In this document: positions 2,492-24,696 of the stretch, piece by piece
Layout: every line of letters begins with the position of its first letter
Position numbering within the stretch: position 1 is the stretch's first letter
From: Oikopleura dioica
Lineage: Eukaryota; Animalia; Chordata
Assembly: GCA_907165135.1 (NCBI GenBank)
Contig: OU015567.1
Coordinates: 3,286,001-3,350,000 of the forward strand
Length of the DNA: 64,000 bases
Direction of reading: 5' to 3'
Made by a program: the position numbers and the translations under genes
The notes under the pieces: model-generated
What the model was told of the DNA's origin: nothing
What the model saw: the letters and a program-made list of their open reading frames with translations, nothing else
Database searches by the model: none

Positions 2492-2834
2492 ATGAAGTTT
2501 TTCTTTTCTGTTTTTCTGTTAAGTTCCGTCACCTGCTATAACCCGATTCACGACGCATTGACTAATCGTTTCTCGCGAATCGACCAAGCACATCATGAAG
2601 GAGAAGATGTCCATAAGCGACAAACACGAAGCGACAGTCAAGGTTTCTTTTAGAATAAGTGACCTTGAAACAGAGTTCATTTAAGGCGCGATCCACGATG
2701 CATATTCTAAGCTTTTCTCTCAATTTGAAAAGAGAACTCCGACAGGTTTGAAACAAGACAAAATCTTTGATATGCATGAAAATTCAGTTGACGACGAGGT
2801 GATCGAACACCTTTTCGGCGACTATTTCGGTTGA
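2492..2834 (+). CDS. Small secreted neuropeptide-like precursor A (about 99 aa)
   Basis: Signal MKFFFSVFLLSSVTC; one 43-nt GT-AG intron (2643-2685); two KR sites; repeated IHDA motif; ends EHLFGDYFG-stop. Confidence 0.75.
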
Positions 2835-3078
2835 AGACTTTAACAAGCATTGTTGAAAACGACAGTTCGTGTTCACCAAGAAATTCTTTCCTTATCATTC
2901 TATGCAATAAATTCTTCATCTTGTACTCAAACTTATTGCATCCTTCTAAAAAGAGCATCAAACCAAATCTTAATTTTTAATCAACCACAGTAATTTGCCT
3001 CCAGCATTCAAAAATTAATACGAAACAAAATCTTATTCTATAAAACAACAGAGAAAGAACGAGAAATCAAGAGCAACG

Positions 3079-3270
3079 ATGAGAATTTTCTTTCCAATTC
3101 TAGCGCTCTCATACGCGGCCGAGTTCTCGAGTTTCGAAGAAAGAAGTGATCCTGGAATGCTCAGCAGGTTCGATGCAGCTCGGTTTTTTCCACGAGTGAT
3201 GCGTGGTGAATCAGGAAATGATCGCATTCTCGATCATCTTTTCGACGACTACTTTGGCTACAACAAGTGA
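3079..3270 (+). CDS. Small secreted neuropeptide-like precursor B (63 aa), paralog of A
   Basis: Signal MRIFFPILALSYA. FSSFEERSDPG resembles FSQFEKRTPTG of A, and ILDHLFDDYFG resembles VIEHLFGDYFG of A. Confidence 0.7.
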   Translation: MRIFFPILALSYAAEFSSFEERSDPGMLSRFDAARFFPRVMRGESGNDRILDHLFDDYFGYNK

Positions 3271-11387: not shown

Positions 11388-14300
11388 ATGTTGACTCACA
11401 GGACTGTTAAATATTTTGAAAAGCTTCAGTTCTCCAAGAAAAAATCACAAAAAATGACTTTTGAGGCTTTTCCGTACCAATTAACTGAGGAGAAGATTTT
11501 GAAATGGTATTCGTCTTTCGTTAAAAATTTAAAAAGACAAACAAGCAGAGATGATAAAGACAGACTTATTTTATCGCTGGAAAGAGCAGAAATCGAGTAT
11601 TTTAAAAAAGAAGAATGGAAGGAAGTCATCTTTCACAAGAGATATGCAGAAGTCTTTACTGATAACCAGCCGAAAAAGATTGTCGACACAACTTGTTTCC
11701 AAAAAATACTTCTTCGCAAAAATCCGACGCTCATTGATCAATTAATACAGCGATGTGAATTAAAAGAAGAGACAGGTCAATGGCAGACAAATCATCTTTT
11801 TCCAGGCCAAGTTATTTCCGCTGGAGGAGAAGCAATTGTGATGAATGAAAATTTCGATGATCTTAAGGGTGTCAACAACGATCGGATAAGGGTCTATCTT
11901 ATGAGTCGACCAACTGATATCTTTTTATTTAGCTTATGACGATCCCAAATCTTTTTTCAGATCCGAAATATCTCAACTAGATCACGAGATACGCAACATT
12001 CTATGGGCGCGCTAATACACTAGAGCTCTGTAGAAAGTCACTGTTAGAAAGGTCATTTTTTAATTTGCGGTTTTATATAGCAAACTATATATTTTCTGAA
12101 AGCTCGAAAAATTCTCTATTCACTGATACCAATATCGATAAGATCAGGCAAGTTTTTCAAGTTCGAACTGCGCGCCAAAAGTCGCAAACACCTGCTCTTT
12201 GGCGCCGGAAAAGGGGATTAAGGGATTAATCAGTGCACAATCTGAGTGCACCGGGAGATTGTCTAAGAGTAAAACCATAATCCATGTGAAAATGAGAAAA
12301 TTCCAATTTCAGGAACTGAACTAGAATCGTGCTCAAACTTTGAAAAAATCGTTGCATCACATTATGCATGCAAACAGGTGCATGCAGCTCAATTTTCAAA
12401 AATCCGTCAAATTAAACTAATAGTTTAGCGTTCAACCTTTCATCTTGAGAAAAATGAAAGGAATTGAATTTCGGGAAGTTACCGAATCTACAGGTACAAT
12501 TTTGGTGAGATCAAGCATTTAAACGTCCTTTGGAGCGGCGGTGGGGATTAATGGATTAGTTTTTTAAAATTTCGCCAAATTAAACTAATAAATCAGGGTT
12601 GAATGTAATATATCATCCAAAAAAATAACTGAATACGATACGGGAAGGTACTGAAACTACAGTCACAAAATTGGCCAGATCGTTGTTGACATCCTTAAGG
12701 TTGCTGTGAGGATTCAAGCATTTGATTCAGCCCTTTTCACAAGAAATTGTGAGCTTACTATTCCCGTTATACACATGTCTAAAAGTATGTATGAACGAAC
12801 TTATTGATATAGATTATTTTTCTTCTGCAAGATGTATGGACACATAAAATTATAATTAAGATTTTGAAAAGGAAATTATACCGAACCATACGAACATTAT
12901 TCGGCATTTTTGCAATATTGAAATATTTAATGAGGAAGACAGTGAACAGGAGGACTGCTTGGGCTGGATAACAATCATGGAACGATGTGAGAAAGATTTA
13001 AAAAAATATCTCTGCGACAATGATGTTCTCATAGATGAAAGAAAAAGTATTGCTACCGGAATTTCAAAAGGACTTGATTACTTGTCCAACGTTATGGGGA
13101 TTGATCATTTCGACAAGAAACCTCAAAATATTTTGATTAAAGGCGGAATTCCAAAGATCATTGATTTTGGTATTCTAAGAGACAAAACTGGACGAAAGAG
13201 CTACAGAAAGATGGGATACGCCAGAAGGGGAAGCAAATACAGAACAGTCGGTTCACTACGTATGTTTTATTTTGTAATGAAAGAGTCATCTATATTCAAG
13301 GCGCTGGTACATCTGGCTTCTGTAATTCAAGACAACTTTTCAATCTCAATAATGTTCCCGACAACGCCAATCTTTATATATTTCTTCTTTGCGACAAGGA
13401 CACAGCACCAAGTCTTCTTTATTATCCAATTACTCAAGAAGAAAAAGAAACGATTCGAGATGAATTAAAAGTTTGTTTACACTTGCGCACTCGTAAAATC
13501 TATAACCCCTGAGCAAACATCGTCCATATTTTAGGCAGCGCCTTACAAACGTGATTGTTTTCCAAAAAGCGCGCCTTGTTCACAAGCCAAGACATTGATT
13601 GAATAATCAAAAAGGTCGATTTTTGCGCAGAGGAAAAGTATGAACTAACACTTTTAATTACCTTTTAAGCGTTTTCATGCAAATAAAATTGTGAGCCAAG
13701 CGTACCTGTATCATCCAAAGAGGGACTTTATCCAGAAAGTTAAGAACATCATCACTTTAAAGCAAAATTTTCCTACACTTTGCATTGACGATAGCAATTT
13801 GACAAAATCATATGATCTGGCGAATTTGAGTCCGCTGATAGAAAAAACTCATCTTTCCGATTTTTATCATCTAACGAAAAACATAACTGACCAAAAAGAC
13901 ACTCTTTTGTGTGTTCCCATTGCAATAAGCAATCTTCTACGATGGGCAATCAAAAATGACTTGGAACTGACCGATGATCTTTTGAACCAGAATTTCTCGT
14001 TTCGATATATATTTTTGCTGGTTATTATGATAATTTATCCTCGAAGTGTGGCGGGATTCAATTTAAATCCGAATGAAGAAGAAAAAGATTATCAGTCCTT
14101 CAGCCAAGTTGAGATTCTTCTAAAGAGAATGAAAATGAAGACATACTTAAACTCGAGTGGATGGGAAATTATCAAAAACCGTCATTTACCGCCAGAATGT
14201 CAAGAGATAGTGAAACCATCTTTGTTTTCATATGAGCAGGGTAAGCAATCTTTACGACTTTGAAAAGAATCGTCGAAAAAAAACTTGGTCGTCATTAAAT

Positions 14301-15061
14301 TTTCAGTATTTCTTCATGAAAATTTCGACTTCACGGAGCCGCTTACCGTCACGGGAGCTTATCTTGAAATCGACGGAAAAGTAACTTACCATCAAATGCT
14401 TTTGGATCGCGTTGAAAATGGCACTTATATTATTCAAAATACACTTTTATGGCATTCTGACCCGCTTATCAGAATTTCATTATTACATCCTTACTACGGC
14501 AGTAGAGAAATGATGGAAGAATGCGATGGTGGCCGTTATAAATACTTCCTTCCAAATAATGGGCCCCTTTGGCTTGTCAATGAGCTCTATCAAAATATGT
14601 GTCCACAAACTTGGTATCTTCTTCCTGGAGCATATTCAATTTCTCTGTCCTATCAACATAACGAAGTCAACAATGAACTCTTCAAAGAACTTATGGGAAG
14701 AAAAGAGTTTTCTATTTATTCCGAAGGAATCAAACGATCATCATCGACTGAAACTGTTTTTATGAGCTCTTCTTTCATTGAGCCTCAATCAATTTGCTTG
14801 AACGAATTCAAAGACGCTGATTCCTGTGTGAACTTTGAAGTTAACTCTCTGCAAAATCGAAGGATCCACGACGAGCTCTTCCGAGAAATAATGATTCAAA
14901 AAAGTTCGAATCGTATGACACAGTCGCTAGAACCTGAAGCGGTTTCTATTGACTTGAGCGTAATAACAGACGAGTCCGATCTTGATTCCTTGCCAGAATA
15001 TATCGAAAAAAGATTGGAAGAAGAATTTTACAAAAAATACCCGTATTTTCAAGAAACCTGA
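11388..15061 (+). CDS. Ser/Thr-type protein kinase domain fused to a papain-like (clan CA) cysteine-peptidase domain
   Basis: Kinase motifs: GQVISAGGEAIV, VAVRIQ, WITIMERCEKDL, HFDKKPQNIL, IIDFG, AGTSGF. In-frame GT-AG splices (13470-13669 and about 14241-14308) lead to TDQKDTLLCVPIAIS and YHQMLLDRVENGTYIIQNT. Confidence 0.8.
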
Positions 15062-15360
15062 AAAACAAAATAGGGCCCAATTGTGCTTGTGATTTCCTGA
15101 CAGCAAAGAAGGCGAATATTTTAAAAGAAAAATCAAATAAAATTATTCTTTTTCCTGCAAAAAAATAAATGCGGCCCTTGGAAAAAAAAGTTTTCGTTGC
15201 ACCAAACTTCAACAATTCTGGTATCCTAGTGTTTTTTATAATAATGAAAATTTTTATTTGTGGCTTGATATTTTACGTATTGAGCAAAAGTTTATTTACA
15301 GTACTGCTAATAATAAGCAAAACAGCCTCTTGTGCTTGGTCAAGTGGGATCTTTGAATAT

Positions 15361-23573: not shown

Positions 23574-24696
23574 ATGAACAACAACAATGAAACCTACCTC
23601 AAGACGGGAGCTGACGATTTCGAGGAACTCGACTATCTGAAGTTACAGCCACATGAAGCCGAGAAGCTGAGACAGTATCTCCTGCAATGCTCAGGTAGGA
23701 TTCGGCAATAAATTATCATTAATAATAATAAATTATAACTAATAAAATTGATATTCAAAAAACTTGATTAAAAAAGGCAAAAACTTATTTTAAAAATTTG
23801 CAAATTTAATTAATATGTTTGACCAATCAGATGGACGCAAAAAAAAAATCCGGACCAATCAAAAAATTAATCGATTTCTTGGATAAAAAAATATTTTTAG
23901 CGATTAAAGCCAAGCAACAGCAGCAATATCTCCAAGCAACAAATAACAACAACAATAACAACAACAACAATAATAACAACAACAATCCTGATGCTCCGAT
24001 TAACTACCACAACAACGTCTACAACGTCAATGGAAACAACACCAGCTTCAATCGCTCATTTAGTCAAAACTCAACAGAGACCAAAGAATTTCCCTCGAAA
24101 ATCATCAAGCAAGAAAAACAAGATGATGTGATTGAAAAATACCCATCAAAAGTCAAAAAGCGGCAAAAATCAAAACCAAGAGCGGACCAAGCGTTGAGAA
24201 ATGCTTCTACTCCTGCGCATATTCTCAGTTTTCAGCAGGTAAAGAAAAACAACAGTCATTTCGAAGCAATAATGATGAGAAAAATGGGAGTTGCTCGTCT
24301 TTTCTTAATAAATATTCGCTCTGGTCGAACTGTTTTCAACGTTTCCTTGACCTTCCTACAAAAAAAACTCGGCTACCCCCTCTTCTTGAGACAAATACCA
24401 TATGATTTCGTTGTATCGGACCATAATTATTCTTTCAAGCGGCTACGTAACCACAGAACCCATTTGGGATTGACGCAGCACGAAACCGCAAAATCGATCT
24501 ACAAACTTGTCGGTAAAAAGATTTCGCAAACACTCGTCTCCCGCTTTGAAACGAATCAACTGCACCCAAAGAACACGCTGAATCTAATGCCCGAAATGGA
24601 GGAATGGATCCGAAAGACACGGTAAACTTCCGAAATTAGGAAATTGACGATTGTTTATTTTTCAGAATTATCTCGACGCGAAGTTTGCTCTTCTGA
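23574..24696 (+). CDS. Divergent POU-specific-domain protein apparently lacking a homeodomain
   Basis: Spliced FQQRLRNHRTHLGLTQHETAKSIYKLVGKKISQTLVSRFETNQLHPKNTLNLMPEMEEWIRK aligns without gaps to the POUs consensus. The N-terminus has poly-N and poly-Q; the stop comes about 10 codons after the domain. Confidence 0.7.
23941..23987 (+). repeat. (AAC/AAT)n microsatellite encoding poly-Asn
   Basis: About 15 consecutive Asn codons in exon 2 of the POUs gene. Confidence 0.9.

What the first reader, a model, noticed from the sequence alone, without database searches (positions are those of the whole stretch)
11388..15061. Protein kinase fused to a papain-like cysteine protease with an intact catalytic set
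Seen in sequence: after the kinase exons, canonical splices continue in frame into TDQKDTLLCVPIAIS (Gln codon 13892, Cys codon 13910) and YHQMLLDRVENGTYIIQNT (His 14390, Asn 14438). Established: papain has Q19...C25 (6 residues apart) and H159...N175 (16 apart), and both spacings are matched exactly. There is no signal peptide and no recognisable I29 pro-domain. Inference: this is a cytosolic kinase-protease chimera, an architecture I do not recognise among standard animal kinases. It could be a self-processing or effector-triggered signalling/defence protein, possibly a member of a lineage-expanded family.
Basis: partly seen in the sequence, partly recalled or inferred. Interest (0 to 1): 0.82.

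Follow-up and report, generated by a model that had tools for sequence, protein, structure and literature searches.

The report
Transposon-interrupted kinase–papain-fold protease gene
This gene belongs to a large, undescribed Oikopleura (tunicate) family that joins an unusual protein kinase to a very divergent papain-type cysteine protease, but in this assembly the copy carries an 832-base mobile-element insertion inside its kinase-coding exon and no RNA from it was found.

Summary

The papain reading is supported by fold, not by sequence models. No Pfam, NCBIfam or PDB sequence hit exists for the C-terminal half. AlphaFold models of two homologues (core pLDDT above 90) match only clan CA cysteine proteases, with C1 best (xylellain Z 11.3; cathepsin L by Foldseek).

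About 41 Oikopleura dioica proteins share the kinase-plus-protease architecture. Across them Gln is kept in 36/36, Cys 34/35, His 26/28 and Asn 25/27. The kinase keeps HxDxKxxN and DFG but has Arg in place of the beta-3 Lys (32/33).

New here:
- The empty site, which restores the frame, is present in two other DNA samples.
- Two bulk RNA-seq runs gave no reads on the gene.

Function is untested, and I found no paper on the family. The scan has already noted this family at eight or more other places in this genome.

The parts
11388..11867 (+). Exon 1, first part: N-terminal region (about 130 aa, no Pfam hit) and the kinase glycine-rich loop (ISAGGEAIV). A second in-frame ATG lies at 11454.
   Evidence: ORF and translation. 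Aligns to the N-termini of O. dioica family proteins, 35-40% identity, with P0012 also starting MLT.
11868..12699 (.). 832-bp non-autonomous DNA transposon (MITE-like) inserted in the coding exon. Terminal inverted repeats GG(G/A)TGTCAACAACGATC. The duplicated target lies within CTTAAGG (a TA or TTAA duplication; ambiguous). No long ORF.
   Evidence: Inverted repeat 22 nt, 95%. The region has 5-50 times the flanking depth in DNA runs. The empty-site joint 11861->12694 (skips 832, 7 shared letters) is present in X5 on a 2988-nt contig and in X2. 832 mod 3 = 1 matches the frame change from exon 1a to 1b.
12700..12784 (+). Exon 1, second part: kinase beta-3 strand with Arg in place of the conserved Lys (VAVRIQ), plus the following segment. 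Donor AAAA|GTATGT, phase 1.
   Evidence: Translation in frame 2. Matches YAVRIHAFDPFLF of P0012 and others.
12861..13259 (+). Exon 2: kinase hinge, catalytic loop HFDKKPQN (non-RD) and DFG.
   Evidence: Pkinase E 9.4e-11. The family profile aligns HxDxKxxN and DFG to CDK9 HRDMKAAN and DFG.
13301..13470 (+). Exon 3: kinase activation segment and C-lobe (AGTSGF..., no APE motif).
   Evidence: Reading frame and GT-AG phase. 41-45% identity to family members.
13670..14240 (+). Exon 4: linker with the conserved LDDxNLTKS-like segment, then the N-terminal half of the papain-fold domain. Gln codon 13892, Cys codon 13910, IIYPRSxAGxNLNP motif.
   Evidence: No Pfam or PDB sequence hit. 46-57% identity to marine metagenome fragments. 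Q and C are nearly invariant.
14307..15061 (+). Exon 5: C-terminal half of the papain-fold domain (His codon 14390, Asn codon 14438, TWYLLP strand), then a tail of about 135 aa with no recognised domain. Stop at 15059-15061.
   Evidence: Homologues P0001 and P0002. His and Asn columns. No Pfam hit.
15136..15141 (+). Candidate polyadenylation signal AATAAA, 75 nt after the stop.
   Evidence: Read directly from the sequence. Not tested.

Best explanation
The locus encodes one member of a multigene family, seen so far only in Oikopleura and in marine metagenome fragments, of intracellular two-enzyme proteins. The layout is an N-terminal region, a divergent non-RD protein-kinase domain whose beta-3 lysine is replaced by arginine, a linker, and a very divergent papain-fold (clan CA, most like C1) cysteine-peptidase domain with a Gln-Cys-His-Asn catalytic set. 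The near-invariance of that set among paralogues makes a working thiol hydrolase the most likely function for the C-terminal domain (inferred). The kinase domain keeps the catalytic-loop Asp/Lys/Asn and the DFG Asp. It is therefore either an atypical kinase or an ATP-binding regulatory pseudokinase that controls or targets the protease (inferred). In the haplotype assembled here, the kinase N-lobe exon is interrupted by a recent, polymorphic 832-bp non-autonomous DNA transposon. This allele is most likely null or crippled unless the element is spliced out. The transposon-free allele, which restores the frame, exists in other samples, and its substitutions point to moderate purifying selection.
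For: Kinase:
- Pfam Pkinase hit, 42 bits.
- The family profile aligns HxDxKxxN and DFG to CDK9.

Fusion:
- Pkinase plus the C-terminal domain occur together in P0012, P0013, P0048, P0071 and P0084, and in 10 of 10 full-length O. dioica proteins tested.
- 41 O. dioica proteins are related at E <= 1e-54.
- P0084 is a single 686-aa ORF.
- There is no ATG upstream of the Cys in exon 4.

Fold:
- The model of P0019 has pLDDT 78 with the core above 90. All top 50 VIA matches are clan CA, with Der f 1 at Z 9.2.
- The model of P0119:334-653 has pLDDT 83.8 and pTM 0.80. Xylellain scores Z 11.3 over 169 aligned residues, and 34 chains reach Z >= 8, all clan CA. Foldseek's best hit is cathepsin L (E 8.8e-3, probability 0.99).
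- The family profile's only PDB sequence match, though not significant (E 0.3-0.5), is the C1B aminopeptidase C. It aligns Q...C to the catalytic Q...C and His to the catalytic His.
- Distant members carry LCWAFA, GHAMVLIG and FKNS motifs.

Conservation:
- Protease: Q 36/36, C 34/35, H 26/28, N 25/27.
- Kinase: Arg 32/33, Asp 36/36, Lys 36/36, Asn 36/36, DFG Asp 35/35.

Transposon:
- Inverted repeats; high copy depth and the empty-site joint in X5 and X2.
- Removing 832 nt restores ...DDLK-VAVRIQ....

Constraint:
- Listed coding differences are 12 synonymous to 10 non-synonymous (X5) and 12 to 13 (X2).
- Of the six listed indels, five lie in introns, inside the transposon or upstream of the start. 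The sixth, +A at 11448, lies between the two candidate ATGs.
Against: - No RNA reads on the gene in two oligo-dT RNA-seq runs (about 1.5-1.8 Gb read from each), and RNA contig runs hold almost none of its words. Neither expression nor the single transcript is shown for this copy.
- No sequence model places the domain in any peptidase family.
- The folded proteins are homologues at 40-50% identity, not the window's own joined domain.
- Triad geometry could not be measured because no coordinates were available.
- Some family members have lost Cys (P0012, P0022), His or Asn (P0019, P0069, the P0084 N-terminal copy), so not every copy is catalytic.
- The Arg at beta-3 is assigned from motif spacing only. 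HMMER does not align the N-lobe.
- The list of differences used for the N:S count was truncated by the tool.
Confidence: 0.75

Rival explanations
1. The transposon behaves as a new intron, so the assembled allele still makes a functional protein. There are two routes. An exact non-canonical GG-AG splice (11868..12699) would restore the original message. The reader's GT(11869)-AG(12860) splice would keep the frame but delete 28 codons of the kinase N-lobe, giving a protease with a crippled kinase.
For: The only boundaries that remove exactly 832 nt and resemble splice sites are GG..AG or GT..GG. Both alternative splices keep phase 1. Larvacean tunicates are known for many non-GT-AG and transposon-derived introns: this is reported for Fritillaria borealis as reviewed in PMC11282704, and non-canonical G*-AG introns in O. 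dioica are from my own knowledge of Denoeud et al. 2010, not checked here.
Against: No RNA read covers the locus. At 832 nt the element is far longer than this gene's other introns (41-199 nt). The canonical splice removes the conserved beta-3 segment that every paralogue keeps.
Confidence: 0.2
2. The papain-fold domain is not a general endopeptidase. It would instead be a ubiquitin or ubiquitin-like deconjugating enzyme, a Gly-Gly-type processing peptidase (as in C39), or another thiol acyl-transfer enzyme.
For: C39 double-glycine peptidases match almost as well as C1 and with lower rmsd (PCAT1 Z 10.2, 2.7 A over 134 residues). The nearest ESM Atlas shapes are Peptidase_C39_2 clusters. UfSP, ZUFSP and ATG4 also appear at Z 7-8.
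Against: The best Z scores and the longest alignments are to C1 enzymes. The Cys-His spacing (138 residues) and the H-16-N spacing follow papain. This copy has no UBA or other recognised domain in its tail.
Confidence: 0.25
3. Both domains are catalytically dead scaffolds (pseudokinase plus pseudoprotease), or the whole family is decaying repetitive DNA with no cellular function.
For: The classical kinase-dead substitution (Lys to Arg) is fixed in the family. Some copies have lost Cys, His or Asn. Other copies in this genome are reported as broken (s1-343559, s1-371357). This copy carries a transposon and gave no RNA reads.
Against: The near-invariance of Q/C/H/N and of the kinase Asp/Lys/Asn/DFG across 41 paralogues at 40-60% identity would not survive neutral decay. 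The N:S ratio of about 1:1 is well below the roughly 3:1 expected under neutrality. A few RNA reads 90-95% alike at 14051-14181 suggest that paralogues are transcribed.
Confidence: 0.15
4. The kinase and the protease are two separate genes, for example neighbouring cistrons of an Oikopleura operon that are trans-spliced apart, and not one protein.
For: The junction intron (13471-13669, 199 nt) is the longest real intron of the gene, and no transcript was seen.
Against: There is no start codon between the stop at 13655 and the catalytic Cys. The splice keeps phase 0 and matches the spliced O. dioica proteins. P0084 and P0069 carry both domains in one uninterrupted ORF.
Confidence: 0.04

Closest known systems
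Papain family, MEROPS C1 / Pfam PF00112 (papain, cathepsins L/S/B, Der p 1, xylellain)
   Same: Best structural matches (Z 10-11.3 over 160-175 aligned residues; Foldseek's top hits). The catalytic order is Gln-Cys-His-Asn with papain's spacings: Q-6-C, H-16-N, and Cys-His 138 against 134. Distant family members carry CWAF-, GHAxxLxG- and KNS-type motifs.
   Different: No HMM hit. Sequence identity in the structural alignments is 7-15%. There is no signal peptide, no I29 pro-domain and no CGSCWAFS motif (this copy has LLCVPIAIS). The domain is cytosolic, sits behind a kinase, and has a family-specific YPRSxAGxNLNP motif.
Bleomycin hydrolase / aminopeptidase C, MEROPS C1B / Pfam PF03051
   Same: The only sequence-level hints point here. 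The family profile against PDB gives PepW/aminopeptidase C (4k7c) at E 0.3-0.5, aligning both the Q...C helix and the catalytic His. PF03051 scores E 0.032 on P0092. Like this domain, C1B enzymes are cytosolic and lack a pro-domain (my own knowledge).
   Different: All scores are below significance and below the curated cut-off. The structural Z is only 6.6-7.0. The domain is much shorter (about 250 aa against about 450) and shows no hexamer-forming parts.
Peptidase C39 double-glycine leader peptidases (PCAT1, ComA)
   Same: Z 9.6-10.2 at low rmsd (2.7-2.8 A). Gln six residues before Cys. These are the nearest ESM Atlas shapes.
   Different: C39 domains are about 130-150 aa, use Cys-His-Asp, and sit on ABC transporters. 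Here the domain is about 250 aa with papain-like helical inserts, has Asn as the third residue, and has no transporter.
Non-RD kinases and Lys-to-Arg pseudokinases such as KSR (comparison from my own knowledge)
   Same: HxD without the Arg (HFD/HLD/HCD), and Arg where the ATP-anchoring beta-3 Lys normally is, with the rest of the catalytic residues kept.
   Different: No detectable specific relationship. The nearest PDB kinases are CDK9, CDK5, TTK and KIT at E 1e-5 to 3e-8, over the C-lobe only.
MITE-type non-autonomous DNA transposons with TA or TTAA target duplication
   Same: Terminal inverted repeats, short duplicated target, no transposase ORF, many copies, polymorphic empty site.
   Different: The superfamily is not assigned. 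The ends (GGG...CCC on either strand) are not the usual piggyBac CCC...GGG, and the palindromic CTTAAG target makes the duplication length ambiguous.

Membership tests
Protein kinase superfamily (Pfam PF00069) | Profile HMM score above the curated cut-off | tested here: met
   42.0 bits against 31.7 on exon 12863-13258. The same holds in 10 of 10 full-length paralogues.
Protein kinase superfamily (Pfam PF00069) | Catalytic loop HxDxKxxN and Mg-binding DFG | tested here: met
   HFDKKPQN and IIDFG, aligned to CDK9 HRDMKAAN and DFG. Invariant in the family. The loop is non-RD (Phe, Leu or Cys in place of Arg).
Protein kinase superfamily (Pfam PF00069) | Beta-3 (VAIK) lysine that anchors ATP | tested here: not met
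   VAVR in the window; Arg in 32 of 33 paralogues. The position is assigned from its spacing of 13-14 residues after the GGEAxV loop, not from an HMM or structural alignment.
Clan CA (papain fold) cysteine peptidases | Papain-like two-lobe fold | tested here: met
   Two homologue models. All top-50 VIA matches are clan CA, best Z 9.2 and 11.3. Foldseek's best is cathepsin L, probability 0.99, E 8.8e-3. The window's own joined domain was not folded.
Clan CA (papain fold) cysteine peptidases | Catalytic Cys followed by His, then Asn or Asp, with an oxyanion Gln before Cys, all conserved | tested here: met
   Q75/C81 of exon 4 and H28/N44 of exon 5. Q 36/36, C 34/35, H 26/28, N 25/27.
Clan CA (papain fold) cysteine peptidases | Cys, His and Asn side chains clustered in three dimensions | not testable with these tools
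   The structure tool returns no coordinates.
Peptidase family C1 (Pfam PF00112 / PF03051) | Profile HMM score above the curated cut-off | tested here: not met
   No hit at E <= 1 on the window's exons or on close homologues. PF03051 scores 13.5 bits against 22 on the distant member P0092.
Peptidase family C1 (Pfam PF00112 / PF03051) | Secretory signal and I29 pro-domain (C1A) | tested here: not met
   No Pfam hit upstream of the domain, and a hydrophilic N-terminus. A kinase lies upstream instead.
Peptidase family C39 | Profile HMM hit and ABC-transporter context | tested here: not met
   No Pfam hit. The context is a kinase fusion. Only fold similarity was found.
Oikopleura kinase-papain-fold fusion family (unnamed) | Both domains in one protein, with significant similarity over each exon | tested here: met
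   Each exon hits family members at E 1e-9 to 1e-49, in the same order and with the same junctions.
Non-autonomous DNA transposon (MITE-like) | Terminal inverted repeats, target-site duplication, multiple copies, empty site elsewhere | tested here: met
   The superfamily is not assigned.

The most novel reading that the evidence does not exclude
The family is a chordate-lineage invention: a single-chain switch in which an atypical (beta-3 Arg, non-RD) kinase domain senses or gates an attached, active papain-type protease. It would have expanded to more than 40 fast-diverging copies as an innate-defence or conflict system in an animal that has lost much of the standard immune repertoire. At this locus one would also be watching a transposon insertion in a coding exon being converted into a new, non-canonically spliced intron.
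Probability: 0.12. Interest if true: 0.8.

Novelty: new variant of a known kind. Interest (0 to 1): 0.55.

Why it matters
Kinases and papain-fold proteases are two of the best-studied enzyme classes, yet I found no description of them joined in one chain in the literature searches I ran. Here the fusion is the defining feature of a family of 40 or more genes in a chordate laboratory model. Both catalytic sets are conserved, and the whole protease half is invisible to Pfam and NCBIfam.

If the protease is active, the family would define a new peptidase family within clan CA and a new kind of kinase-coupled proteolysis. The fixed Lys-to-Arg change would be a natural test case for how a "kinase-dead" residue is tolerated or used.

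The locus also offers a polymorphic transposon insertion inside a coding exon, in a lineage known for transposon-derived and non-canonical introns. With RNA from carrier animals, that question becomes directly testable.

For this particular copy the practical message is more modest. It is a real member of the family, but probably a disrupted allele in the reference assembly.

Tried and rejected
- Pfam on all six exon pieces gave only the kinase. The weak Imm26, FDX-ACB and similar hits are below cut-off and were ignored.
- NCBIfam gave nothing relevant.
- PDB sequence searches with the two protease exons gave nothing.
VIA-align and a second model built from a deeper alignment were needed.
- The ESM Atlas feature search pointed to Peptidase_C1 at 0.91. 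I treat this as a lead only.
- There are no paralogues of the gene and no further copies of the transposon inside the window.
- The look-up of encoding contigs for P0001 returned no DNA.
- The apparently stand-alone distant members (P0077 and similar) are probably not stand-alone. P0077's contig has a kinase ORF just upstream on the same strand.
- HMMER does not align the kinase N-lobe, so the beta-3 assignment could not be confirmed by alignment.
- Five literature searches on Oikopleura with kinase, protease, papain, kinome or gene-family expansion terms found no description of the family.
- The bacterial-type promoter and terminator scan is irrelevant to this eukaryotic gene.
- I considered piggyBac for the transposon because of the TTAA, but the element's ends do not fit and a TA duplication fits equally well.
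Full report
**What is in the sequence**

- ATG at 11388 and stop at 15059-15061.
- TDQKDTLLCVPIAIS, with the Gln codon at 13892 and the Cys codon at 13910.
- YHQMLLDRVENGTYIIQNT, with His at 14390 and Asn at 14438.

Three introns have GT-AG ends and matching phases: 13260-13300 (41 nt, phase 1), 13471-13669 (199 nt, phase 0) and 14241-14306 (66 nt, phase 1). Exon 12863-13258 scores 42 bits on Pfam Pkinase against a cut-off of 31.7. It carries HFDKKPQN and DFG. The two C-terminal exons have no hit in Pfam, NCBIfam or PDB sequences.

**The first 'intron' is a transposon in an exon**

A 22-nt inverted repeat (11862-11883 / 12678-12699, 95%) brackets 11868-12699. Just after it, in the frame shifted by +1, the sequence reads VAVRIQAFDSALFTRNCELTIPVIHMSK.

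Removing 832 nt (832 mod 3 = 1) joins ...NFDDLK to VAVRIQ... in frame. The family proteins have exactly this segment (P0012 ...EYAVRIHAFDPFLF...).

Laying public DNA contigs on the stretch showed two things.
- The element's interior has 5-50 times the flanking depth, so it is a multi-copy repeat.
- The empty site (joint 11861->12694, skips 832, seven shared letters CTTAAGG) is present in a 2988-nt contig of a related sample (X5, organism B). It is also present in another sample with the window's species label (X2).

So the assembled haplotype carries a recent, polymorphic, non-autonomous DNA transposon inside the kinase N-lobe coding exon. An exact removal would need a GG-AG or GT-GG intron.

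**Relatives**

Word searches with each protease exon found only short marine-metagenome fragments at 46-57% identity.

An exhaustive profile search with the Cys-exon alignment found only 85 representatives. The named ones are all Oikopleura dioica [quoted passage not shown].

Using the 664-aa P0012 as query gave 41 further proteins. All but three are O. dioica; the three are unnamed metagenome fragments. Many are 640-795 aa long. Pfam sees only the kinase in them.

The window's exons are 35-57% identical to the best of these. Together with the short introns, about 39% GC and the genome size implied by the runs, the window is very probably Oikopleura. I did not establish which lineage.

More distant members on metagenome contigs keep the kinase link.
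- P0084 is one 686-aa ORF reading protease-like, then kinase, then protease.
- P0077 follows a kinase ORF on the same strand.

**Is the fusion real?**

For this copy there is no transcript evidence. Two oligo-dT RNA-seq runs gave no reads on the gene, apart from three partial reads 90-95% alike at 14051-14181, presumably from paralogues. RNA contig runs hold almost none of its words.

The sequence logic favours one protein.
- There is no ATG between the in-frame stop at 13655 and the catalytic Cys.
- The junction residues match the spliced O. dioica proteins.
- Relatives carry both domains in one uninterrupted ORF.

**Fold of the C-terminal domain**

| Model | Confidence | Foldseek (PDB) | VIA-align, all PDB clusters |
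|---|---|---|---|
| P0019 | pLDDT 78, core above 90 | Nothing significant | Top 50 all clan CA cysteine proteases: Der f 1 Z 9.2, xylellain 8.9, cathepsin B 8.7, PCAT1 8.8 |
| P0119:334-653, intact Q/C/H/N | pLDDT 83.8, pTM 0.80 | Cathepsin L first (E 8.8e-3, probability 0.99), followed almost only by C1 enzymes and staphopain | Xylellain Z 11.3 (169 residues, 3.5 A); 34 chains at Z >= 8, all clan CA |

C39 peptidases come close behind at lower rmsd, and the nearest ESM Atlas shapes are Peptidase_C39_2 and Peptidase_C1 clusters at TM 0.40-0.44.

At sequence level the only hints are sub-threshold. The family profile's sole relevant PDB match is the C1B aminopeptidase C (E 0.3-0.5), aligning the Q...C helix and the catalytic His. 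PF03051 scores E 0.032 on P0092. Distant members read DQKNSSLCWAFA, GHAMVLIG and YLFKNS, which is papain-like to the eye.

The domain is therefore papain-fold and most like C1, but it is not a member of any curated peptidase family.

**Conservation**

In an alignment of the 41 O. dioica proteins, with the window's exons added as separate fragments:

| Domain | Position | Count |
|---|---|---|
| Protease | Gln | 36/36 |
| Protease | Cys | 34/35 (Ser in P0012) |
| Protease | His | 26/28 |
| Protease | Asn | 25/27 |
| Kinase | Catalytic Asp | 36/36 |
| Kinase | Catalytic-loop Lys | 36/36 |
| Kinase | Catalytic-loop Asn | 36/36 |
| Kinase | DFG Asp | 35/35 |
| Kinase | Arg at the beta-3 Lys position | 32/33, never Lys |

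The beta-3 position is assigned from its spacing after the GGEAxV loop. HMMER aligns only from beta-4 onward.

In the wider set some copies have lost Cys, His or Asn. Examples are the N-terminal copy of P0084, P0019 (Asn to Thr), and the second half-domain of P0082.

Against the two other DNA samples, the listed coding differences are 12 synonymous to 10 non-synonymous, and 12 to 13. Of the six listed indels, five fall in introns, inside the transposon or upstream of the start. The sixth is a +A at 11448 in organism B, between the two candidate ATGs. This is a truncated list and a rough measure, but it is well below the roughly 3:1 ratio expected for neutral decay.

**Mechanism**

Shown:
- A kinase fold with an intact catalytic loop and DFG.
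- A papain fold in close homologues.
- A conserved catalytic tetrad.
- Covalent fusion across the family.
- A polymorphic transposon in this allele.

Inferred:
- The protease domain is an active thiol hydrolase.
- The kinase domain, with Arg for the beta-3 Lys and a non-RD loop, is either an atypical kinase or a nucleotide-binding regulatory module.
- The transposon-bearing allele is null or hypomorphic.

Not known: the substrate class (general peptides against ubiquitin-like or Gly-Gly sites), any self-processing, and the biological role.

**Comparison and novelty**

The parts are known kinds, but I found no description of the combination in five literature searches. The proteins sit in public databases with only the kinase annotated.

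Earlier notes of this scan report the same family at eight or more other places in this genome, with the same reading. One reports a UBA tail and another an ankyrin-like N-terminus. Neither is detectable in this copy.

What this locus adds is the transposon insertion with its empty-site allele and the absence of RNA reads.

**Verdict**

I rate it a new variant of known kinds and of moderate interest. It is not higher because this copy is probably a disrupted allele and the family has already been flagged elsewhere in the scan.

Noticed in passing
window 11840-11867: Contigs of X2 (depth 57) and X5 (depth 49) join 11839 to 12700 with 28 other letters in place of 11840-11867. The replacement is in frame...V-LEQKIGGLD-VAVR... 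instead of ...V-MNENFDDLK-VAVR.... It is either a close paralogue or a divergent transposon-free allele. Only 26-28 nt match on each side.
   Followed up: no
window 11448: Organism B (X5) has an extra A in the A-run between ATG 11388 and the in-frame ATG 11454. There the protein would have to start at the second ATG, or else that copy is frameshifted. P0012 also starts MLT, which favours 11388 as the ancestral start.
   Followed up: partly
window 12393-12512 and 12561-12681: Inside the transposon there are two imperfect direct repeats of about 120 nt (about 70% identity), with a 43-nt core at 79%.
   Followed up: no
window 13730-13867 vs 14894-15031: Weak internal similarity (37% over 46 aa, E 0.12) between the linker just before the protease domain and the C-terminal tail. 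It may be chance, or a repeated docking or cleavage motif.
   Followed up: no
L001:1407-3467 (P0084/P0094) and L001:133-1308: A marine-metagenome contig (GC 34.5%) carries one 686-aa ORF in three parts. First comes a papain-like domain with His replaced by Thr and Asn by His, then a kinase, then a second papain-like domain with the canonical HAVILF...FKNS. A second, 391-aa kinase gene of the same kind lies just upstream.
   Followed up: partly
P0082 (ENA metagenome protein, 290 aa): Two tandem copies of the C-terminal half of the protease domain. The second has Tyr in place of the catalytic His (FYKMQL).
   Followed up: no
window 2492-3270, 23574-24696 and upstream of the window: Other first-stage notes on this window and its neighbourhood describe a neuropeptide-like precursor pair, a POU-specific domain without a homeodomain, and a GH144-like hydrolase. 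They are listed and I did not examine them.
   Followed up: no
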